Source of the DNA: Trichoplax adhaerens
Taxonomy: Eukaryota > Animalia > Placozoa
Reading direction: 5' to 3'
Length of the DNA: 64,000 nucleotides
NCBI RefSeq assembly: GCF_000150275.1
Contig: NW_002060946.1
Coordinates: forward strand, 8,089,554-8,153,553
The notes under the pieces are model-generated. The model saw nothing but the letters and a program-made list of their open reading frames with translations, was not told the origin of the DNA and did no database searches. A program made the position numbers and the translations under genes. Below, piece after piece: positions 23,286 through 64,000 of this stretch (positions within the stretch are counted from its first letter, which is position 1; each line of letters starts with the position of its first letter).

Positions 23286-26000
23286 ATGGAAGATAATTCA
23301 TTACCTAGTTATCTCTTGTCCATGATCGATAAGGGACATGATGATGAGAATATCATGCATTGGATAGATTCCATCGATAGTCTCCAAGTATTCAAGCGAA
23401 GTGATAATGATTGCAGACCTGATCAACATCTAATCAAGCAATTGGAGGAGACTTTCAATCAATCATCTTGGTCAAGTAAGGTTTATGCTTTAACGATCAT
23501 GATTGCTTTATTGAAACAAGATCAATCCTCTGCTTATCAAGATTATTATAAATCATGGTATAAAATGTTGATGCATTTACTGCAAGGGAAAATAGCATCG
23601 ATGAGACCCAACTTCAAGCGATTAGTCAATGTAGCTATAGCGAAATTGCTAGTTAGAATAGCACGCGTAAGTGATACTGCTAATCAATTTATAACTCATC
23701 ATTTATCTGCATTAGTTCAGTATATGACTAAGTTAGATTCCACTCAGGTCGATGGATCATTCTTAGCACTATTGACGACATTGTTGCAACATTATTCTTC
23801 TGCATGTGGACAATATCATAAACCGTTAAGGAGATGGATTATTCAATGCATGCAACATCAGCATGATCTAATTTGGCCTTTAGCATGTCAAAATTTAATT
23901 GCATTAACAAAATGCGGTGGAAGTGGAAATGCAGGGAGTAAACATATTGAAAATTGGTATCAATTATGCAATGAATTAATCGCCACACTACAATCGGATT
24001 GGCATCAATTATATAAAGATATCGATCAATTAAAAGGAGAAGGCATGGTCTTAATACCATCCAATGCATCGATATCACCTATTCAATGGCAACCATTGCC
24101 AACGGATGAACCCAATCGTACGTATACCTTAATACATCAAGTACAGGTTGGATGTACATGTTTAACCTTGCTATTACAACAAGAATTTGCCTATCCTGTA
24201 TCAATTCCCATTGCTACGTTGATCAAGATTATTTCCAACATCATCAATGTCAATCATCGCAATATTCAACAAGATCAACATCGTAACATTGAAACAACAT
24301 TGCTTTTATCTTGTATATCTAAACTCCATTGCCATGCCATTCATTTATTATCTGCATTAATTCATAGTAGTCGTTGCCATCTTCTACCATATTATTCACT
24401 TATAACGAAAATTCTTCTCAAAGTATTGGAGATAACACAACAACAAGATTGGCCTCAGGATTGTCGAAAGCCCTTTTTAACATTACGAAAATTAACTTAT
24501 CAAGTCCTGTCTGAGTTATTATTACTTGTATCAACAGATACTTTACAATATACTGATGAATTCATTCATCATATCATGTATGATATGAAGCCTAATGTTT
24601 ATACTACAAAGTTACAAGCTTCCACTACTGCCAATAATTCAAGTCAATCCAAAGTTGGCCAAAGTAAAAAGAAGCGAAAAGGTCGACAATATCAATATGA
24701 AGATATCAATTCTAACTTTAGAAATGACAACAGGATAAATCCTTTTCTTAATCAGGAGATATGTACAGCAGCTTTGAAATTATTACAGACGATGATTATA
24801 TGTTTAGGTTCTTCTATTGACGCTACGTTATTCCAAACGATCACTAACTTTATTACTCAATCGCTGATGCAGATTCAGCAAGGATTCACTTGCAATCCTA
24901 CTATATCGTCTGGTAATACTATACCTGTACCATATTCAAGTGGAGCGTGCCGATTAGAGCTTTATCGTAGCTTATTATCATGTGTTCAAGTATCCTGTTG
25001 TAGTAAAATGCCGACCATACTACGTTATGCAATTCAGATTTTAAGCCACGGAAAGCGTGATTTCGATATAGAAATTATTAAATTTTGCTATGAAGCACTG
25101 GCAACTTGTACGATGTTAATCCATACCACTAGACCTACTTTGCCAACAACTGTACCGACTAATAGCAGCCTGACTAGTGGGCAAGACCTATTCAATAAAG
25201 TTAACAGTCTTAATCACTTGAATACAGTTAGAGATACACTTAAAGATAACAAGAATTTAGCTCTATCAAATCAGTTTATTACTACTGTGGATGAACTAAA
25301 AGTTGTAAAAAATCTTAGTGATGATAACGATGATGGAAATGGGATAGCGAGTAACAGTAATAAATTTGAAATCATTAAGGATTCGTCAACAACTGAAGAC
25401 CAAGACAATAAACATGTTATGTCATTTCAGGCATCGAACGCGATACAGCGTCGTGAAATTGCTATGCAAGATCAGCAAAATGATGATAAGGGTGTTGTAG
25501 TTCCAAACGTAAATGTTAGTGAAACGGTTACTATGAACTCTGTTGAAAAAGTTGCAGCCATGTCTAGTAGACAACAGGAAGATAGTCCGAATACATTGAC
25601 AAATCAGATACCAACGCTAAAAAGAGATATGGATAGTATTGATGAAGGTGCCGGTGTTGGGAAAAACTTTACCAGTAAAGATACAGAACCAGTTAGTAAG
25701 CGTGTTCGATTCAATATCAATAACCAACAAACAGATACATGTGATGATCTCGAACAATCGGAGATGCAACTTACAAACACAAATGAAACTGCTAAACCGG
25801 AGGTAAGAACGTTGTCCAAAATTATATTGCCGTATTATTTCGATGAACTGTATGTGGAGCACAAATGGACATTATTTTATTATGTCTTATATCAATTTTA
25901 GGACAGTACCGATGATGATCGTGTGAAAGCTATGCTAGACAGTTTCGTCGATTCTCAACCCGATTCCGATGATGTTGATGATAACGATGGCGATGCTTAA
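23286..26000 (+). CDS. PELP1: PELP1/Rix1 homologue (rixosome subunit), exons 23286-25802 and 25902-26000, 871 aa
   Basis: Helical Rix1-like N-terminal domain with LxxLL motifs, GGSGNAGSKH..W and PYSSGACRLELYRSLLS. Splicing GAG|GTAAGA...TTTTAG|GAC yields DDDRVKAMLDSFVDSQPDSD, which matches the PELP1 C-terminal AMLADFIDCPPD motif. Confidence 0.88.
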
Positions 26001-28173: not shown

Positions 28174-30105
28174 ATGGCAGATAAACCATCAAAATCAACT
28201 ATCCCTCAGCAAATACAATCTCCATTTGAGATAGGCAAGAAAGATTACGAGACTGGCAATTATAACGAGGCACTCTCTCATTTGACCCAAGCACTTGATC
28301 AAATTCCATCAATATCAAACCCTTCCGCTGATCTTGACCATCTTCAATGCGATATTTATCTTTATATTTCTGATATCTATATCAGACAAGGTGATCTTGT
28401 AAAAGCAGATGAGTTTAGCCAGAAAGCACTAAAACTGGCTAATCAACTACAAGATCAAATAAAATTTGCTCGATATTTAGATAAACAAGGCGGTATTAAA
28501 AAACTACAAGGTAATATCAGCGAGGCCTTAGAGGATTACAAGAAATCACTTGAAATTAAGCAAAAATACATGAAAGACGAAGAATTAGACGTCGCTCATT
28601 CGTATACTAACATTGGGAATATCTATTTTAGCCAGGATAAATTTGATGATGCACTGTCTATGTTTCAAAAATCGCATAAAATCTTAGTAAAGCTGTTTGA
28701 TCATAATCATGAGCATGTTGCTACAGCATATAACAACATGGGAAGTGTGTATGGCTTACAAGGCAAGTATAAATATGCTCGTTCTATGTTTGAAAAATCT
28801 CTTCAAATCAATTTGCAAATACTGGATGAAAATGATCCTGAACTTATAGCAACTTATATGAATATTGGTAATGTTGATCGGAGCCAAGGCAAATATAATG
28901 ATGCTGTTTCTATGTATAACAAAGCTTTGAAAATAGCACTACAAAGGTTTGGTAATGATCATGTTCAAGTTGCTCAGTTATATAACAATTTAGGGATTGT
29001 TCACGATCAGCAAGGAAAATACGATGAGGCTCTTTCTACACACCAAATGGCGCTTAAAATTAGACTGAAATTATTTGACGAAAATCATCCTGATGTTGCC
29101 CAATCTTACCAAAATATAGGAAATATATACAGTGATCAAGGCAAATATAAGGAAGCTCATTCTATGTATGAAAAGTCGCTGAAAATTGGCTTGCAAATAT
29201 ACGGTGAAAATCATACTGTTGTTGCTAATGCTTATAATAACATTGGAATGTTGCAAGCTCAACAAGGCAAATTTCAGGGTGCTGTATCAATGTATTATAA
29301 ATCACTTCAAATTCGAATGCAACTATTTGGCGAAAATCATTCTATCGTTGCTCAATCCTATGAAAATCTGGCAACTACTTATACTGAGCTGAATGAGATT
29401 GATCTTGCTCTTCGTTTGCATGAAAAATCACTCCAAATTTATTTGCATGCACTCGGTAATAACCATCCTAATGTTGCTAGTTCATGCCTCAACATTGGCA
29501 ATGCCTATAACCATCTTGAGCAATATGATGAGGCTCTTTCTATGTATAGAAAAGCAGTAGAAGTTTACATACAAGTACATGGCGATCATCATCCTGATGT
29601 TGCTACTGTTTGGAATTGCATTGCTAGCGTTTACAATCTGCAAGGCAATTATGATGACGCTCTTTCGACGTATAAGAAATCGCTTGAAATTACTCTGCAA
29701 ACGCATGGCGAAAATCATCCTAGCACATCCTTGTTATATTACAACATTGGGACAGCCTATGATAGTCAAGACAAATTTGACGAGGCTCTTGATATGTATG
29801 AAAAGTCGTTAAAAATTGATTTGGAGGTACTGGATGATAGTCATTCTCGAGTTGCATCGGCATACAAAAGTATTGCGGGCATATACGATACTCAGTCGAA
29901 ATTTACTGAAGCTATATCAACGTACGACAAAGCTATTAGTGTCTTGATTAATGTTTACGGAGAGAATGATCCAGAAATTGCAGAGTTATATGAAAATATC
30001 GCAGTAATTTATAAACAACAGAATCTCCTTGAAGACGCAGCTGCTATGCAACAAAAGGCGGATAATATTTATAGCAATCTACCTGGGGAAAACTCTACTG
30101 ATTAA
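28174..30105 (+). CDS. Tetratricopeptide-repeat protein with 42-aa (kinesin light chain/NPHP3-type) repeats, 643 aa
   Basis: Tandem 42-residue units such as HPDVAQSYQNIGNIYSDQGKYKEAHSMYEKSLKIGLQIYGEN; single coding exon. Confidence 0.92.
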   Translation: MADKPSKSTIPQQIQSPFEIGKKDYETGNYNEALSHLTQALDQIPSISNPSADLDHLQCDIYLYISDIYIRQGDLVKADEFSQKALKLANQLQDQIKFARYLDKQGGIKKLQGNISEALEDYKKSLEIKQKYMKDEELDVAHSYTNIGNIYFSQDKFDDALSMFQKSHKILVKLFDHNHEHVATAYNNMGSVYGLQGKYKYARSMFEKSLQINLQILDENDPELIATYMNIGNVDRSQGKYNDAVSMYNKALKIALQRFGNDHVQVAQLYNNLGIVHDQQGKYDEALSTHQMALKIRLKLFDENHPDVAQSYQNIGNIYSDQGKYKEAHSMYEKSLKIGLQIYGENHTVVANAYNNIGMLQAQQGKFQGAVSMYYKSLQIRMQLFGENHSIVAQSYENLATTYTELNEIDLALRLHEKSLQIYLHALGNNHPNVASSCLNIGNAYNHLEQYDEALSMYRKAVEVYIQVHGDHHPDVATVWNCIASVYNLQGNYDDALSTYKKSLEITLQTHGENHPSTSLLYYNIGTAYDSQDKFDEALDMYEKSLKIDLEVLDDSHSRVASAYKSIAGIYDTQSKFTEAISTYDKAISVLINVYGENDPEIAELYENIAVIYKQQNLLEDAAAMQQKADNIYSNLPGENSTD

Positions 30106-47428: not shown

Positions 47429-48034
47429 ATGAAAGCAAATTGGACATTAATCGCTATTAGCGCTATATTACTTGTTGCAACCATTTTGGGTCCTGAACAA
47501 GAACGTCAAAGTATGGAGCAGCCTGAATCCGAAGAAGAAGACTATTTCTATCCTGATGATGTCGATGATCCTGATCAGGGAGAACCTAGGGGATTACCAT
47601 CACGGAAAATGTATTCGGGTGGTACAACCAAAAAACCACGAACCTCGAAAATGGTAAGAATTAAAACATCGCTTTCGTTGACACCAAATGCTCCTTTACG
47701 CAACATCCATATAGTTATAATAATCGTATAGTCATAAAATCAAACTACAGTTATAATTTTAGCGATGACGAAAAATTCATACGAATAGATCACTATAATT
47801 TAGGTTAGGCCTCTACTAAAGTTAACTAAGTAGAAATATTACGGCATTTCATTTCGCTAGGGTAAAATAACTTTTAATAATGATATCTCAATTGCTTATA
47901 TAGCAATTTCATCTTGCTTTATTGTCATTCATAAATGACTATATTTGCTTTTAAAGGGATGGGGTATGGATCGTTTGATGGCCTATGTGCACAAATTATC
48001 GAATTTGTTTAAATCAAAAATGAAGAAAAAATAG
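47429..48034 (+). CDS. Secreted peptide precursor A, 100 aa: signal, acidic propiece, basic linker and amphipathic Lys-rich C-terminus GWGMDRLMAYVHKLSNLFKSKMKKK; exons 47429-47653 and 47957-48034
   Basis: Hydrophobic signal MKANWTLIAISAILLVATILG; acidic ESEEEDYFYPDDVDDPD; donor ATG|GTAAGA at 47654; acceptor ttttaaag ending 47956; phase 0 open to TAG. 5'UTR acceptor at 47420. Confidence 0.72.
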
Positions 48035-51000: not shown

Positions 51001-52807
51001 AAGTATAGAATTTATGATTTATACCTACGGAAAGAATAAATCTATACAGTATTTGACCTTTTCATTACCTTAACATGAGAGAGCGGAGCTACCACCATAG
51101 GTAGTGGATGAAGGTATTATGATTTATTAGTGAAATGATAGGATGTTAACAATGATGAAGCGCAAATCTTATTTATGGAACGGCAGTACAGTACTAGAGA
51201 TAAAAAATGAATGATTCTTTATAAGTGATCTTTGTATAATTAAAGGTAAGTATAAAAACCTAACTCTAGCTTGTTCTAAATGAATACATAATGATTTATT
51301 GACGAAGTTTCGGAATGTAAACAAGATGAGACACAAATCTTATTAATAGTATACGAGTAGGACTAAAGGTGGTAGATAATTTATATATGATCCTTATAAA
51401 CCATCTTGCATAATTAATACCGGTAGTAACATCCGAATATCTATGCCTATATTGTTTATTCAAAATTATTAATTCAGGATTACTTTCGTATTTACATACA
51501 ATCTAAACTACTCTGGATATGTTACGTTCAGAATTATAATCAGTAATTCGGTATCATTATTTATTTCTATAAATAAAACAAAGACGCAACATCATAAGCA
51601 ACTAGTAATGAAATAATCATTCGGAAGTTGTATCAAATTGTTTGTACATTTTATGAGTAATTTTTGAAGGTGTTATACTGTATATCAAAGAAAGCACTCC
51701 TTAACATTATGTCAACCAATTAATTTACTAAGTAAATCTGCCCCCATGACCAAAGCCGTTTCATCTGAAGTTTTGGATTATTCATCTGATTCTTATCGTG
51801 GCCTAATTTCATATTCCACAATGGTAGGCTATTGCTATTGGCATCACAGTTTGATAATCAATAGACTACATATATTATGCTTTCGGTCAATTATATTATT
51901 ACTCATTAATGGACAATATTTCGGTCCATCTTGTTTAAAGGCTCATAATGATATTTTGGCAGATTATACAATTTAGGTACTGAATGGATCTATCCTTTTC
52001 TAGCCTTCCGTATTGCACTCCGCTAAAACTAATTTTAAAAGCTCCATTATGCCCCATTACTATAGCAGCTACCGGTACTATGAAGGCCAGAAAATGGTCT
52101 TATGGTACTATTCTATAAGCTAATATTCGCAATTTACCCTAGCACTCGAAATTGTCTGAAGACCATCTTATAGACTCCATAGCAACGATAACTGCTAAAT
52201 TATTCAATTCTTAGTGATATTATTAAAGTACTCTTCTATATTTAATACTGCGTATGAACTAGTTGATTTCAATGTGATTATAAAATATCTTCAAACGTTT
52301 ACCATGTAAAACAGTACTATGGTAATAAAATGCTATTCTTAAATCACCGTTAAAGTCTTTTAAAATTAACCGCTGCTATCCTAGAAAAGACAATACATGC
52401 ATTAGCAATTAACAAATGAAGTTACTCAGTTGTATTACGTTTATCTATATCTAGAAGAATAATATATGAATAAAATAACATTTCTTTTTTGTCTTAGCAA
52501 AAGTATTCAAGTAGCTAAATCTCCACGAAATTACAAACATTTTACTTTGTCTCATAATAAGGTACGAAGTGATTAGTAGTGAGTTTGATTACGTGTAGTA
52601 ATAAAATTGACAGGTCTTATTGGTAGAAATAAGTTAGTTTTTTACTAACAAAATTGTGTTTGCAAGTATATATTGAGTACGGATCACATAATAGTATGAA
52701 TCGATTAACAATATTGTGTCTTATTTACTTTTGAAATTAACTAGCGTAAGAAATTTATCGATCACTGTCTAACTTCTCTCTTCATGATTACAGGTGCAAA
52801 TAGGAAA

Positions 52808-53307
52808 ATGAACATTAAATTGGCCTTGATAGCGTCGCTGTTTCTCTTTGCGGTGGCAAATGCTACCGAAGAAAATTACTCTGAATTCGAAAATCAATTA
52901 AAGGAAGAAGATGCAACCGATGATGCAACTCTCATGGATAAAGATGAAGGCGATGAAGATGATGAGACTGAGCAGCCAGTGGATATGATTGATGCTGATA
53001 AGGACCGCGAAGAGCTTGAAACACCAATGAAAAAATCGGTTAGTGTTTAGTATGCATTAATTGCTATAGCTTTTGTATCCCGTGACTAGTAAGTAATTTG
53101 CCTGCTTTTGAATATATTCCACTATTGTTATTAATATGAATTTTTATTACTGAATATTTTGGCATTTCTCAACTTAATGCCTATTTCTAAATTAAAATAT
53201 AGTTCTGGTGGCGCCGTCGTCGTCGTCGTCGTCATGATCGTCGTCGAGTTATCATTATTCCTCAACGTCCATTTTGGCGTCGTCGCAGCCATTTTCATGT
53301 ACCATAA
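52808..53307 (+). CDS. Secreted peptide precursor B, 111 aa: signal, 58-aa acidic propiece and FWWRRRRRRRHDRRRVIIIPQRPFWRRRSHFHVP; exons 52808-53038 and 53203-53307
   Basis: Signal MNIKLALIASLFLFAVANA; 25 D/E in the propiece; donor TCG|GTTAGT at 53039; acceptor atatag ending 53202. Exon 2 is a GC-rich CGT-codon island open to TAA. 5'UTR acceptor at 52793. Confidence 0.85.
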
Positions 53308-55538: not shown

Positions 55539-56483
55539 ATGGCTTATATTTTTTTGGCTGCAGTAGGAGGATTTGGCGCTTTATTATGTTTTTCTCTAGT
55601 GATATTTACGTTAAGCCGCCGCCAGCTACGGTCACCAAGTTATGCTTCCTTTATAAGCTTATGTACTAATGGGATACTCTTTGGTAGTTTGTATTTAATG
55701 CCAAGGTATGGCACAGATTTTTCTCGTGATACTCCTGTAATTTGCCATATGTTACCACGATTAGGTCAAGCACTTTTACTTAATGTTGGTCTCCACGTTT
55801 CTGTAATGACTATTGAACGATATTTCGCTATCGTATATCCATTCAAATACCAACGATTTATAACTAGAGGAACTGTAATGGTTATCATCTTATTTTTATG
55901 GTTTCTGGTTATTGGCTTGCAAGCAATTGTTAGTGGACTCGAATTCATTCAAATTAATCAGACAGTTGCTAATAAATGTGCTTATAGTAGAGGATTCGAA
56001 AACACCAGCAATCTTATTAATGCCGGATTTAGCGTTGCATTAAGCTGCTTAACGCTAATCATCTTAATTTACGTATATACACTTGTTTTAATCATCATAA
56101 GACGCCACCAAGACAAGATTCGTCGGCAACTTACTCTATCGAATCCAGATAAAATAGCAGTTAAAACTCGTAAAAAAGCAGTATTACAAACTGGTTTGCT
56201 TTTTGGTGTTTACTTGGTCTTCTTTTTACCTTTTCTTTTTGTGACTGCTTTTTTACCTCGTTTGCCATTCAGCAAGCCGTTATATTATTTTTATATCAAC
56301 GTTTTGCGAAATATGGCGTTCATTTTTCCGTTTATTCAACCCTTGTTATATTTAAAATTTACGGCTAATATTAACAGAGAGTTAAAAAGCATTCTAGGAA
56401 ATCTTTCAGTACATAAAAGTGCTGCTAGTAATCCGAATATTGCTATACTTACTTTTGAAAAATCGATAGGTATGCAGATATAG
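55539..56483 (+). CDS. Orphan rhodopsin-like (class A) GPCR, 314 aa, single coding exon
   Basis: Seven hydrophobic segments, ICL1 LRSP, TM3 Cys (VICH), MTIERYFAIVYPFKY (DRY variant), TM4 Trp, TM6 FFLPF and TM7 QPLLY (NPxxY variant). Confidence 0.9.
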   Translation: MAYIFLAAVGGFGALLCFSLVIFTLSRRQLRSPSYASFISLCTNGILFGSLYLMPRYGTDFSRDTPVICHMLPRLGQALLLNVGLHVSVMTIERYFAIVYPFKYQRFITRGTVMVIILFLWFLVIGLQAIVSGLEFIQINQTVANKCAYSRGFENTSNLINAGFSVALSCLTLIILIYVYTLVLIIIRRHQDKIRRQLTLSNPDKIAVKTRKKAVLQTGLLFGVYLVFFLPFLFVTAFLPRLPFSKPLYYFYINVLRNMAFIFPFIQPLLYLKFTANINRELKSILGNLSVHKSAASNPNIAILTFEKSIGMQI

Positions 56484-60275: not shown

Positions 60276-60992
60276 TAGAATGTAATCCAGGAGCAAGTTA
60301 GCACTTTGGCAGAGATAAGACCCTTCATAAAAGGATTAGGCTTTAGTAAAGTTCTAAATGCAATATTTTAATGGATCCTTAGTGGATGAATAAACAAGAG
60401 AAGTCTAATTATACGGAGTCTCATGCAGCCCATTAAAGCTCTGTTAAATTGCAATGTGTTCATTCAGCTATTAAGTTAACTTAGGATCTGATATTGGAAA
60501 GTGAATTTCGTCCGTAAGAAAATTGCAACTATTGCTCTATTTGGAAAAGAGTTTCCATTTACTTAGCACTATGATAATTATTATAATAAAACATGCGTGG
60601 AAACCAAATTTAGTTTTAGGAGTTTGCTACACCAATGCTATTCTATGATTTGTACTGGACAAAAAATTTTTTTTTTGGATAATGATGAGAATCGGCACGT
60701 AAAATTTGCATTAACGGCCAGACAAAGAAGTCATAGCATTTTACTCACTAAGAATGAGTCGGCATTTAATATTGGAGAAAGTAAGAAAGCAAGTGAAGAG
60801 TCGAAAGTAATCTCCTGTTATCTAGCTTAATGATAATGGCATAATTTTACTGAGAATAGAAATTACAATAATTTTAGAGTTACTGCTATTTAATAATCAT
60901 TTATAAGATCGCTAGTGTAAACAAATCAAATAAATATAGTCTTATCGCTGTCTTGGCGTTAAAAAGTGGTGAATGAATACAGGTCTAATAAT

Positions 60993-61460
60993 NNNNNNNN
61001 NNNNNNNNNNNNNNNNNNNNNNNNNNNNNNNNNNNNNNNNNNNNNNNNNNNNNNNNNNNNNNNNNNNNNNNNNNNNNNNNNNNNNNNNNNNNNNNNNNNN
61101 NNNNNNNNNNNNNNNNNNNNNNNNNNNNNNNNNNNNNNNNNNNNNNNNNNNNNNNNNNNNNNNNNNNNNNNNNNNNNNNNNNNNNNNNNNNNNNNNNNNN
61201 NNNNNNNNNNNNNNNNNNNNNNNNNNNNNNNNNNNNNNNNNNNNNNNNNNNNNNNNNNNNNNNNNNNNNNNNNNNNNNNNNNNNNNNNNNNNNNNNNNNN
61301 NNNNNNNNNNNNNNNNNNNNNNNNNNNNNNNNNNNNNNNNNNNNNNNNNNNNNNNNNNNNNNNNNNNNNNNNNNNNNNNNNNNNNNNNNNNNNNNNNNNN
61401 NNNNNNNNNNNNNNNNNNNNNNNNNNNNNNNNNNNNNNNNNNNNNNNNNNNNNNNNNNNN
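60993..61460. other. Assembly gap (N run)
   Basis: 468 consecutive N. Confidence 1.
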
Positions 61461-62993
61461 TAATCAAGAATAGTTTTTACCGATTATCTGTGTACATTCT
61501 AGCTGAATTGGTAGATTAGCTTTCGCAGTGCAACTATCCAAATTATAATATTTCGATTACCCTAGATAAGAGCATCAACACTGGTGATAAAATGAATTCT
61601 ATAAACATAAGGAAAATTTAAAGGTAAGTCCGGGTTAGAGTCATATTTTTCATGTAGCAAACTAACTCCTTCCGCCGTTCATTTGATTTCAATAGATCGT
61701 TTATTGAGTATTCATGTTACCTTATTAGTCATAATTTAAACAGACTTTAATAATTTCAATAGCGGCAGACTTTGGTATCATTGATGACTATCCTATAACT
61801 AATTAATTTGGCTAAAGTAAATGAAAAATATAGGAATGAAACTTCAATAAACAAGTTTTGAATTAGGATTATTTTTTCCTTGTGATATCATCACGATATA
61901 CTGAATGTAATTGTAGCCATGATTAATTTATTCCATTGTTATCTCAGAATATAGATAGCAAGCTCAACACTTGAATTATAAAGATTAGTGTATATGTTCC
62001 TATATACAGTATAGTTAGTAATATATATGTAATGTTTATATTAATTTCAACTCAAATCCTAATTACCCTGTCCACAAGGCTCTTATAAAGTAAACAACGT
62101 CAATTTTCTTTGTTTATTGATATGGAACTACATGTTGCCTAAGGCATCTGGTAATCGTATGCTATTAGAAATGTTCACAATCAGCATCATGTATGTAAAA
62201 CTGTCATTATTCCATCTTAGTACTTTAAATAACAATCTTAAGAGAAATTTTATTGAGATCAGACTAATTTGTAACAACCCATTGAAAATATTATCTTAAT
62301 ACTCCATTTATTATGTGACTTCAACCCGTCGTTAATACTTTCATTTCCCTGATTTAAAACACAAAGAATTGTTACCTTCCTCTTTATTACCTTTTCGTTA
62401 TCCAAAATGCACTATTTTTACAATAAAGCATATAAAATTGAAGATAATAATAAGCGTGTGAACAAATAAAAACGATGTTTTTTAGTTGAAATTTTCCTGA
62501 ATTATCGAAATTAAAGATATCGATACTGAGGAAATTACAATGCAAACACTCTCAGATTGATTAGAACTATGACTTTATTTTAATTTCGCTCGAATATTTA
62601 TCAATCATTTATAAAAGTAAGACGTTCCTTTTGTTAAAGCTAGGATATATAAACAGCTATCTTGCAGCTCAAAATCTTAACCACTGGAAATCGAACACTA
62701 AGCTTCCTTAAAATATTGTCTATTGCTTTACTTTGGAAATTCAGGAAGGATCGCAGAATTTATCTCAAGAATTAATTTAGAAAATTAAAAGTTGTTGAGG
62801 TACGTATTAACATTAAGCGTTTTTTAAAAATCAAGGTTATAGTCGCAATAATATGTATTAATCATTCAATCTATACTATATTCGAAGATGCCGTATATTC
62901 ATCATTTCAATTTCAATTCGAATACTACAGTCCATCCAGTACTAAAAATTAATCTTTATTTCATTGACTATACAGAAGGATCATTGCAAGAAA

Positions 62994-63243
62994 ATGAATA
63001 CTAAATTGGCTCTCATTGCGTGTCTATTTCTCTTTGCATTTGCTTACGCCACTTAAAAATTTTTTAAATATATCTATCTAAATACTAAAACTCTTTTCAA
63101 CTTGAAATTTACTATAGCAGGCCTTTTGGCGCCGTCGCCGCCGCCGTCGTCGTGCTCCAGCCCCTGCTCCGAAACCTCGACGTCCCATCATCTTCCATTT
63201 TTATCGTCGTCGACAGATTTTCGTCTATGGCAAAAAACGATAA
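62994..63243 (+). pseudogene. Paralogue D of precursor B: signal MNTKLALIACLFLFAFAYAT then stop (62994-63056), propiece and donor missing, but intact cationic exon 63121-63243 (AFWRRRRRRRRAPAPAPKPRRPIIFHFYRRRQIFVYGKKR)
   Basis: Signal is nearly identical to B, with TAA where B has GAA. No GT lies between the stop and the TAGCAG acceptor at 63115-63120. The last exon is open for 40 codons. Confidence 0.72.
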
Positions 63244-63660
63244 AATATTCACTACAGAATTAAACTAGTTTATAAGGTCCATTTTCCTAAAATTAGAGAG
63301 CAACCAAGACAGATAAGAATCGTATACTGTCTATATTTTGCTAAACTAAGAATGTAGAATATTTAAATGCTATTTTATCGCATCTTGTTAACAGTAGTTT
63401 AAAACTGAATGATCCGTAAAGTATTACTGCTAGTTCATGGCTAGACGAAGTAGTCTATAATTGCAATATCAAATTAAAATTTTTCAGTAATAATATGTTA
63501 TTTACGTTATGTACCTGATATTGCCTGTATCTGATCCTAGTCTTCTTTTTTGGTCACAAAATAAACGTTTCATATACGATGAATTCAAGGCCTTGAATGT
63601 TGGAATCAGATTTTGATAGTTCTCCAATCAATTTTTCCAAGGAATAATTGTTATACCAAC

Positions 63661-64000
63661 AAGTTCAGCCAAGCTAATTACTAATGATAGTTCCTAGTCT
63701 TTATAATATCGAATTACTCTTTAGCCATATGAGCTTAGATAAGCTCTTTGTGATGTCTTTCCAAATAGATATGGTGCCGATTCTATAAAGTTACTTTACA
63801 AATTGATACGATTCCTGAGAATGCGCTCATACAGTACTCTATATGAATACTGGAATTATTCATAAATAAAGTTTAGTCAAGCTAAATTACTAATGATGGT
63901 TCCTAGTCTTTATGGAATCGCTTAAATTACTCTTAGTTGTATGTACTTAATAAAGCCTTTTACGTGTCTTTCCAAATAGACATATTATCGATTGTATAAG
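63661..64000. repeat. Local duplication (~130 bp x2, ~208 bp apart)
   Basis: aagtt.ag.caagcta.attactaatgat.gttcctagtcttta...gtctttccaaataga at 63661 and ~63869. Confidence 0.8.

What the first reader, a model, noticed from the sequence alone, without database searches (positions are those of the whole stretch)
52808..53307. Trp/poly-arginine peptide FWWRRRRRRRHDRRRVIIIPQRPFWRRRSHFHVP behind a 25-acidic-residue propiece
Seen: the 34-aa final exon has 14 Arg, 3 Trp, 3 Phe, 3 His and 1 Asp (net about +13) and follows KKS, a candidate dibasic cleavage site placed almost exactly at the intron. The FW-RRR motif occurs twice. Established: R/W-rich peptides (tritrpticin, indolicidin) are membrane-active, and oligo-arginine is a cell-penetrating motif. 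Inference: a natural cell-penetrating or nucleic-acid-binding antimicrobial peptide charge-masked by its propiece. Alternatively the Arg runs are convertase sites releasing SFWW, VIIIPQRPFW and SHFHVP.
Basis: partly seen in the sequence, partly recalled or inferred. Interest (0 to 1): 0.82.

Follow-up and report, generated by a model that had tools for sequence, protein, structure and literature searches.

The report
Trichoplax arginine-rich secreted peptide gene
This is a real two-exon coding unit of the placozoan Trichoplax adhaerens for a secreted peptide packed with arginine and tryptophan, but it is already an annotated (uncharacterised) gene and belongs to a published family of putative antimicrobial peptides, so it is a new member of a known kind.

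Summary
In detail: 52808-53038 encodes a signal peptide plus a 25-acidic-residue propiece ending KKS, a 164-nt GT..AG phase-0 intron follows, and 53203-53307 encodes the 34-residue Arg14/Trp3 peptide. The window is Trichoplax adhaerens. The same splice junction is already in the public model TRIADDRAFT_56105 (213 aa, "predicted protein", with a doubtful 102-residue N-terminal extension) and in Trichoplax sp. H2. The gene belongs to a placozoan family of about 30 loci (35 profile matches) sharing the signal peptide MN.KL..IA, an acidic propiece, a phase-0 intron and a payload starting with Trp plus an Arg run. Named members are AMP3 (60631) and AMP4 (64402) of Mayorova 2025 and the trichoplaxin-2 precursor, whose synthetic C-terminal peptide kills bacteria at 0.25-2 uM. 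So the antimicrobial reading has published precedent in paralogs but is untested here; processing into small signalling peptides remains a live rival. This copy is the only one of 14 compared that lacks a C-terminal Gly-basic signal, probably through a 1-nt frameshift relative to AMP4. The scan had already met this family on other DNA of this genome.

The parts
52808..52864 (+). Signal peptide, MNIKLALIASLFLFAVANA (19 residues; cleavage after ANA is inferred from the -3/-1 rule, no predictor was run)
   Evidence: translation; M1 N2 K4 L5 A9 A15 invariant in 11 of 11 aligned paralogous first exons; signal-peptide part alone scores 33.7 bits against a profile built without this gene.
52865..53038 (+). 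Acidic propiece, 58 residues, ends PMKKS; candidate dibasic site KK at the exon end
   Evidence: 25 Asp+Glu in exon 1; net about -19. Exon 1 ends KKA in the trichoplaxin-2 locus and L086 and KKS in P0017/P0019.
53039..53202 (+). Phase-0 intron, 164 nt, GTTAGT...ATATAG
   Evidence: a phase-0 intron lies at the same place, just before the Trp/Arg-run exon, in the 14 two-exon paralogs modelled; the junction KKS|FWW is present in the stored public proteins P0007 and P0020.
53203..53307 (+). Payload exon: FWW, R7, HD, RRR, VIIIPQRPFW, RRR, SHFHVP, stop
   Evidence: identical in Trichoplax sp. H2.
53215..53246 (+). (CGT)n tract coding most of the first Arg runs
   Evidence: Tandem Repeats Finder, period 3, 10.7 copies, 86% matches.
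53281..53307 (+). C-terminal hexapeptide region that looks frameshifted relative to AMP4-type copies (1-nt gap in the last Arg codon; the other frame reads Q.F....KR like AMP4's QIFVYGKKR)
   Evidence: Two-sequence MAFFT alignment and my reading of it; weak because only two low-complexity sequences.
51746..52807 (+). Upstream exons and open frame that the public 213-aa model TRIADDRAFT_56105 adds in front of MNIK (about 51746-51823, 52004-52104, 52498-52561, 52745-52807); probably 5' UTR or an ab initio artefact
   Evidence: tblastn of stored protein P0007 on the window, sequence; all 10 other aligned paralogs and the 'expressed protein' models of AMP3 and the AMP4 cluster start at MN.K.
62995..63243 (+). 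Second family member in the window: AMP4-type copy with a 675-bp deletion (signal peptide codons 1-20, then TAA; payload exon intact)
   Evidence: blastn: window 62226-63053 = L003 1-828 (99.8%) and 63053-63953 = L003 1504-2405 (99.1%); profile match E 2.6e-5 with 1 TAA.

Best explanation
The stretch is the coding core of Trichoplax adhaerens gene TRIADDRAFT_56105, a diverged tandem relative of AMP4 (TRIADDRAFT_64402) in a placozoan family of about 30 secreted prepropeptide genes. Shown: signal peptide, acidic propiece, conserved phase-0 intron, last exon opening with Trp plus an Arg run. Inferred mechanism: translation starts at MNIK (111-residue precursor); the signal peptide is removed; the acidic propiece partly neutralises the payload during transport and storage in secretory granules; a prohormone-convertase-type enzyme cuts at the conserved KK at the exon end and possibly in the Arg runs; the released Arg/Trp/Phe-rich product is secreted by epithelial or gland cells and acts as a cationic, membrane- or polyanion-binding defence peptide on microbes of the biofilm the animal feeds on. 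Family membership I hold at about 0.95; the antimicrobial function at about 0.45.
For: Identity: neighbour ORF is in the cluster of TRIADDRAFT_56106 on a contig of 8,164,392 bases, the length of this contig; stored protein P0007 = TRIADDRAFT_56105 holds both exons joined at KKS|FWW, H2 orthologue 210 of 213 identical, payload identical. Family: 11-sequence alignment with invariant M1 N2 K4 L5 A9 A15; 35 matches in the own genome at E<=1, 32 of them at E<=1e-3; 17 proteins at E<=1e-3 among 1.84 billion, 10 of 17 named and all of those Trichoplax, 7 unnamed; leave-one-out profile 45.1 bits vs 7.5 for the best of 200 shuffles; phase-0 intron before the Trp/Arg head in 14 of 14 modelled paralogs, Trp within the residues before the first Arg run in 12 of 14. 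[quoted passage not shown]
Against: The public model starts 102 residues upstream, which would bury the signal peptide. It is the only 1 of 14 compared paralogs without a Gly-Lys/Arg signal near the C-terminus, and its tail looks frameshifted relative to AMP4, which fits relaxed constraint. The payload has three Pro and no amphipathic helix, so T2's activity cannot simply be carried over. AMPs of Mayorova 2025 are 'putative': the passages I read report no killing assay. AMP4 metacells were classed 'peptidergic' or 'epithelial unknown'. Propiece charge does not significantly track payload charge. The homology signal sits mainly in the signal peptide.
Confidence: 0.55

Rival explanations
1. Regulatory (neuropeptide-like) precursor: the Arg runs are convertase sites; after carboxypeptidase trimming the products are small peptides such as VIIIPQRPFW and SHFHVP that signal between cells, and the acidic part and FWW head are discarded.
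For: 13 of 14 compared paralogs end in Gly followed by Lys/Arg, the amidation-type signal. AMP4's last unit is RRR, then Q....Y, then GKKR, i.e. the N-terminal Gln plus C-terminal amide pattern described for placozoan peptides such as pQPPRWamide. After the first long run the later runs are mostly exactly RRR at regular spacing. AMP4-expressing metacells were classed 'peptidergic' or 'epithelial unknown'. An intronless rhodopsin-type GPCR gene lies 2.2 kb downstream, though Trichoplax has very many.
Against: This gene has no terminal Gly and no repeated identical unit. Runs of 7-13 Arg are far more than a cleavage site needs. In paralogs ending RRRRF-G-KK full cleavage would leave a single amidated residue, and internal units of three residues (LYY, FYY) carry no Gly. 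The Trp before the first run is kept in 12 of 14 paralogs, odd for a discarded spacer. None of the twelve placozoan preprohormones discussed in the passages of PMC9545775 that I read resembles it.
Confidence: 0.25
2. Decaying or silent duplicate: a diverged copy of AMP4 that lost its C-terminal signal by a frameshift and is little or not expressed; or the 213-residue public model is right and the product is not secreted.
For: 'Predicted', not 'expressed', protein; frameshift-like relation to AMP4 and a 12-nt gap; only copy of 14 without Gly-basic end; a neighbouring family copy 10 kb away carries a 675-bp deletion; no exact or similar protein of 42-133 residues in the 5.8-billion collection and the exon-1 read-through ORF is not there either.
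Against: Both exons are open, splice sites canonical, signal peptide keeps all invariant family residues, payload identical in H1 and H2 (these two lineages are very close, so this is weak).
Confidence: 0.12
3. Physical rather than antibiotic role: Arg/aromatic peptides that condense granule contents, stick to polyanions (mucus, algal walls, substrate) or help lyse prey during external digestion.
For: Family payloads are Arg plus Tyr/Phe/Trp in strict periodicity, e.g. RRR-LYY eight times in L073; AMP1-3 are the top transcripts of peripheral ventral epithelial cells with dense granules. That Arg/aromatic sequences associate strongly is general knowledge, recalled.
Against: No test of any kind; this copy has little periodicity.
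Confidence: 0.08

Closest known systems
Trichoplax AMP4 (TRIADDRAFT_64402 and near-identical 64427, 62560, 62241) of Mayorova et al. 2025, PMC12013895
   Same: Closest paralog: first exon 42% identical, signal peptide 16 of 20 residues the same by my count; same intron place and phase; same block order in the payload: aromatic head, long Arg run, spacer, hydrophobic block ending in two aromatics, RRR, short tail. A deleted AMP4-type copy lies 10 kb downstream in the window.
   Different: AMP4 ends QIFVY-GKKR (amidation-type signal); this gene ends SHFHVP with no Gly, apparently by a 1-nt shift, and lacks 12 nt in the hydrophobic block. AMP4 is 'expressed protein' with FISH data; this gene has neither.
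Trichoplaxin-2 precursor (EST GR418172.1), PMC7436000
   Same: Same family: signal peptide MNMKL.LIA, acidic propiece ending KKA, phase-0 intron, WW plus Arg run. The authors describe the same tripartite design and note the polyarginine head.
   Different: T2 has 13 Arg and then a predicted amphipathic helix ending GK; this payload has 7 Arg and a Pro-containing, non-helical tail. T2 peptides were synthesised and tested; this one was not.
Trichoplax AMP3 (TRIADDRAFT_60631), PMC12013895
   Same: Family member by profile (best hits); WW, R9, then a short tail.
   Different: [quoted passage not shown]
Hydra arminins
   Same: Architecture only: signal peptide, acidic N-terminal part, basic C-terminal peptide, as Mayorova et al. 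point out.
   Different: No sequence relation seen: none of the 10 named proteins among the 17 profile hits in 1.84 billion is from Hydra. Arminin details are otherwise taken from the paper's passages, not tested.
Trp/Arg-rich antimicrobial peptides (indolicidin, tritrpticin) and oligo-arginine cell-penetrating peptides
   Different: Those come from cathelicidin precursors; no Pfam family matches either exon at E<=0.01. Analogy, not membership.

Membership tests
Placozoan signal peptide / acidic propiece / Trp-polyArg precursor family (AMP3, AMP4, trichoplaxin-2) | Conserved signal peptide MN.KL..IA..L...A | tested here: met
   Invariant M1 N2 K4 L5 A9 A15 in 11 of 11; 33.7 bits for the signal peptide alone against a profile built without this gene.
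Placozoan signal peptide / acidic propiece / Trp-polyArg precursor family (AMP3, AMP4, trichoplaxin-2) | Strongly acidic propiece in the first coding exon | tested here: met
   25 Asp+Glu of 77 residues; paralogs 14-33.
Placozoan signal peptide / acidic propiece / Trp-polyArg precursor family (AMP3, AMP4, trichoplaxin-2) | Phase-0 intron directly before the payload exon | tested here: met
   14 of 14 modelled paralogs, introns 130-530 nt.
Placozoan signal peptide / acidic propiece / Trp-polyArg precursor family (AMP3, AMP4, trichoplaxin-2) | Payload opens with Trp (or aromatic) followed by four or more Arg | tested here: met
   FWW + R7; Trp present in 12 of 14, Phe in 1, 1 ambiguous.
Placozoan signal peptide / acidic propiece / Trp-polyArg precursor family (AMP3, AMP4, trichoplaxin-2) | C-terminal Gly followed by Lys/Arg (amidation-type signal) | tested here: not met
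   Ends HVP-stop; 13 of the 14 compared have the signal, this gene is the exception. I treat it as a usual, not a defining, feature.
Placozoan signal peptide / acidic propiece / Trp-polyArg precursor family (AMP3, AMP4, trichoplaxin-2) | Expression in epithelial or gland cells; antimicrobial activity | not testable with these tools
   No transcript data at hand (closed); supplements of PMC12013895 closed.
Hydra arminin family | Detectable sequence homology to arminins | tested here: not met
   17 hits at E<=1e-3 in 1.84 billion proteins; 10 named, all Trichoplax; 7 unnamed (ENA/Logan) with the placozoan-type signal peptide.
Neuropeptide / regulatory peptide preprohormone | Signal peptide and basic cleavage sites flanking peptides | tested here: met
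Neuropeptide / regulatory peptide preprohormone | C-terminal Gly for amidation, repeated copies of one peptide | tested here: not met
   No Gly in the payload; only the FW-RRR motif recurs.
Cathelicidin-derived Trp-rich peptides | Cathelin-like prodomain | tested here: not met
   No Pfam family for either exon at E<=0.01.

The most novel reading that the evidence does not exclude
The Trp-Trp/oligo-arginine head is kept on the mature, secreted peptide (cleavage at the conserved KK, the Arg run resisting the convertases), so that Trichoplax makes natural oligo-arginine 'cell-penetrating' peptides, of which this R7 peptide with a new frameshifted tail is one, and uses them to enter or condense microbial or algal prey rather than only to perforate membranes.
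Probability: 0.15. Interest if true: 0.65.

Novelty: new member of a known kind. Interest (0 to 1): 0.3.

Why it matters
Placozoans have no organs or immune cells and graze on biofilms, so their secreted peptides are their main interface with microbes. This gene adds a divergent, non-amidated member to a family that includes the most highly expressed genes of the ventral epithelium, and the family view assembled here (one signal peptide, one intron position, a Trp/poly-Arg head, about 30 loci linking trichoplaxin-2 with AMP3 and AMP4) is not stated in the passages I read of either paper. It does not open a new kind of system: design and hypothesis are in print for paralogs.

Tried and rejected
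Pfam on both exons and five neighbouring ORFs: nothing for the two exons. The search for homologous proteins with exon 1 (76 residues): no candidate; explained later by the length window, since the public model is 213 residues. Exon 2 alone against the own genome: only itself. Pattern TGG + five MGN codons in the own genome: 81 hits against 61 for the reversed control, noisy because MGN includes Ser codons, but it led to the paralogs. Charge-masking test across 14 paralogs: positive trend only, Spearman 0.46, p 0.10; my automatic donor choice for the T2 locus in that script (75 residues) differs (71 residues), so its propiece charge is approximate. Whether AMP1 (55945) and AMP2 (56030) are members: not shown; a search with a first exon of the 6.6-Mb cluster found TRIADDRAFT_63910 and two H2 proteins, not 55945; accession arithmetic (XM to XP offset of 36 from 64402; 63910 = XP_002111678, five after the number expected for 55945) only suggests that AMP1 lies in that cluster. 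RWamide precursor considered for the paralog ending RRRWGKK and rejected: the published one is a multi-copy QPPRWGR protein. Literature: no paper holds TRIADDRAFT_56105, B3RU00, XP_002111748 or TrispH2_010013; Trichoplax together with polyarginine or trichoplaxin occurs only in the two papers of the Juretic group among the 20 listed of 202. Mayorova et al. speak of five arminin-like genes and the passages I saw name four; the fifth could be this gene, but supplements (S7 Fig, S8 Text) are closed. Their probe table labels Ta-64402 'AMP3' while the text calls it AMP4; I follow the text. Papers were read as passages only (PMC12013895, PMC7436000, PMC9495127, PMC9545775, PMC5612019); others as search listings. 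Recalled, from no call: genome statistics of Trichoplax before one search confirmed the species, indolicidin/tritrpticin, stickiness of Arg/aromatic sequences.

Full report
What is there. The window is AT-rich eukaryotic DNA (about 31% G+C) with large single-exon ORFs. At 52808 an ATG opens a frame that reads MNIKLALIASLFLFAVANA, then 58 residues with 25 Asp/Glu, ending PMKKS at 53038. The next bases are GTTAGT; if they are not spliced out the frame stops at 53048-53050. After ATATAG at 53202 a frame of 34 codons reads FWW, seven Arg, HD, RRR, VIIIPQRPFW, RRR, SHFHVP and a stop at 53305-53307. The intron is 164 nt and phase 0.

Whose DNA. The window is G000:C1411:8089554-8153553 in an assembly of 105,631,681 bases and 1414 contigs. 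The ORF at 55539-56480 is, by exact look-up, in one cluster with TRIADDRAFT_56106 of Trichoplax adhaerens on a contig of 8,164,392 bases, the length of C1411. It is not human DNA.

It is already a gene model. A profile of 11 paralogous first exons, searched against 1.84 billion representative proteins, returned 17 proteins at E<=1e-3. One, P0007 (213 residues), holds this gene's two exons joined exactly at KKS|FWW behind 102 extra N-terminal residues; it is TRIADDRAFT_56105 / XP_002111748.1 / B3RU00, 'predicted protein', and Trichoplax sp. H2 has TrispH2_010013, 210 of 213 identical with an identical payload. That length explains why the word-based search with exon 1 found nothing. The extension maps to three small upstream exons and the open frame just before the ATG. 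I think it is an artefact or a 5' UTR: all 10 other aligned paralogs, and the 'expressed protein' models of AMP3 and of the AMP4 cluster, start at MN.K, and an internal signal peptide makes no sense.

The family. Exon 1 alone finds weak relatives in the own genome. Reading these loci showed the same plan each time: MN.KL..IA signal peptide, acidic stretch, intron, then an exon opening with Trp and a run of 4-13 Arg. In the alignment M1, N2, K4, L5, A9 and A15 are invariant and identity to this gene is 27-42%. The profile has 35 matches in the genome at E<=1, 32 at E<=1e-3, in clusters on C1410 (0.62 and 4.75-4.78 Mb), C1411 (4.73, 6.59-6.63, 7.40-7.42, 8.14-8.15 Mb), C1399, C1378 and small contigs. 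Built without this gene, the profile still scores it 45.1 bits against 7.5 for the best of 200 shuffles; 33.7 bits come from the signal peptide, so the propiece adds little sequence signal beyond its composition. For 14 two-exon members I modelled the splice: all have a phase-0 intron of 130-530 nt directly before the head, and 12 of 14 have Trp just before the first Arg run.

Named relatives. By exact look-up, P0004 is TRIADDRAFT_60631 and the cluster of the L003-type copies holds TRIADDRAFT_64402, 64427, 62560 and 62241. In Mayorova et al. [quoted passage not shown] The locus at C1378 encodes WW, 13 Arg and then exactly the 20 residues published as trichoplaxin-2 (against Table 1); that paper (PMC7436000, passages) took the precursor from EST GR418172.1, described signal peptide, acidic propeptide and C-terminal peptide, called the cut after the 13 Arg 'a subjective choice', and measured MICs of 0.25-2 uM for the synthetic peptides. 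The passages I read of the two papers do not connect trichoplaxin-2 with AMP3/AMP4, nor describe the shared head and intron.

Closest relative and what changed. AMP4-type copies are the nearest (42% in exon 1). The payloads have the same block order. A DNA alignment of the two last exons shows this gene lacking 12 nt in the hydrophobic block and 1 nt in the last Arg codon; read in the other frame its tail would be Q.F....KR, matching AMP4's QIFVYGKKR at Q, F, K and R, while the real frame (SHFHVP) shares only F. Since 13 of 14 compared paralogs keep a Gly-Lys/Arg end, I infer that this copy lost it by a frameshift. This rests on two low-complexity sequences and needs an outgroup. A second family copy in the window (62995-63243) is an AMP4-type gene with a clean 675-bp deletion of codons 21-90, the donor and most of the intron.

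How it probably works. Shown: the anatomy. Inferred: secretion, partial charge neutralisation by the propiece (net -19 against +13; across 14 paralogs the sums range from -6 to +27 and the correlation is weak), cleavage at KK and perhaps in the Arg runs, and action of an Arg/Trp-rich product on microbial envelopes. The tail has three Pro and low helical moment, so if active it would work as an extended Trp/Arg peptide, not as a T2-like helix. The main rival is processing at every Arg run into small signalling peptides; the Gly-basic ends, the Gln after RRR in AMP4 and the 'peptidergic' label of AMP4 metacells speak for it in the family, the absence of Gly here, the excessive run lengths and the conserved Trp speak against. 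A silent or decaying copy is a third possibility.

Verdict. Observation confirmed; interpretation partly supported but not new. It is a new, somewhat aberrant member of a known, functionally untested family. Earlier notes of this scan on other stretches of the genome reached the same family assignment; I saw them after my own.

Noticed in passing
window 62995-63243: AMP4-type gene copy with a 675-bp deletion relative to locus L003 (contig C1150): 20 signal-peptide codons, then TAA, no donor, payload exon intact and ending QIFVYGKKR. Flanks are 99-100% identical to C1150, so C1150 may be the other allele or an unplaced duplicate of this place.
   Followed up: yes
window 47429-48034: Another two-exon secreted precursor with a different signal peptide (MKANWTLIAISAILLVA), acidic middle and a Lys-rich last exon; not matched by the family profile, so a different family with the same design.
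   Followed up: partly
window 55539-56483: Intronless rhodopsin-type GPCR ORF (7tm_1, E 2.6e-18), part of TRIADDRAFT_56106, 2.2 kb downstream of the peptide gene; the H2 versions of both genes sit on one 94,042-base contig.
   Followed up: partly
L065 (C1410:~0.62 Mb), L073 (C1411:~4.745 Mb), L068 (C1411:~7.40 Mb), L077/L078/L080 (C1411:~6.6 Mb): Paralogs whose payload ends RRR(R)F-G-K would, if amidated, carry a C-terminal RFamide. Senatore et al. [quoted passage not shown]
   Followed up: partly
L073, minus strand, payload about 415 nt after the ATG: Payload with RRR-LYY repeated eight times, then YI, YYI, YYY units and RRRRFGKK: a strictly periodic Arg/Tyr peptide of net charge +41.
   Followed up: no
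L054 (C1412:~7.467 Mb): A Trp/Arg head (WGWRRRRRYYIRRRR) continues in one open frame into more than 200 residues of Lys/Arg/Gln/Leu-rich, coiled-coil-looking sequence: a long-form relative.
   Followed up: no
window 60990-61460: Run of N (assembly gap) between the two family copies.
   Followed up: no
window 28174-30105 and 23286-25901: Large single-exon ORFs (643-residue TPR_12 protein; 871-residue ORF without Pfam match) whose exact sequences are not in the protein collection, so public models there differ from the plain ORFs.
   Followed up: no
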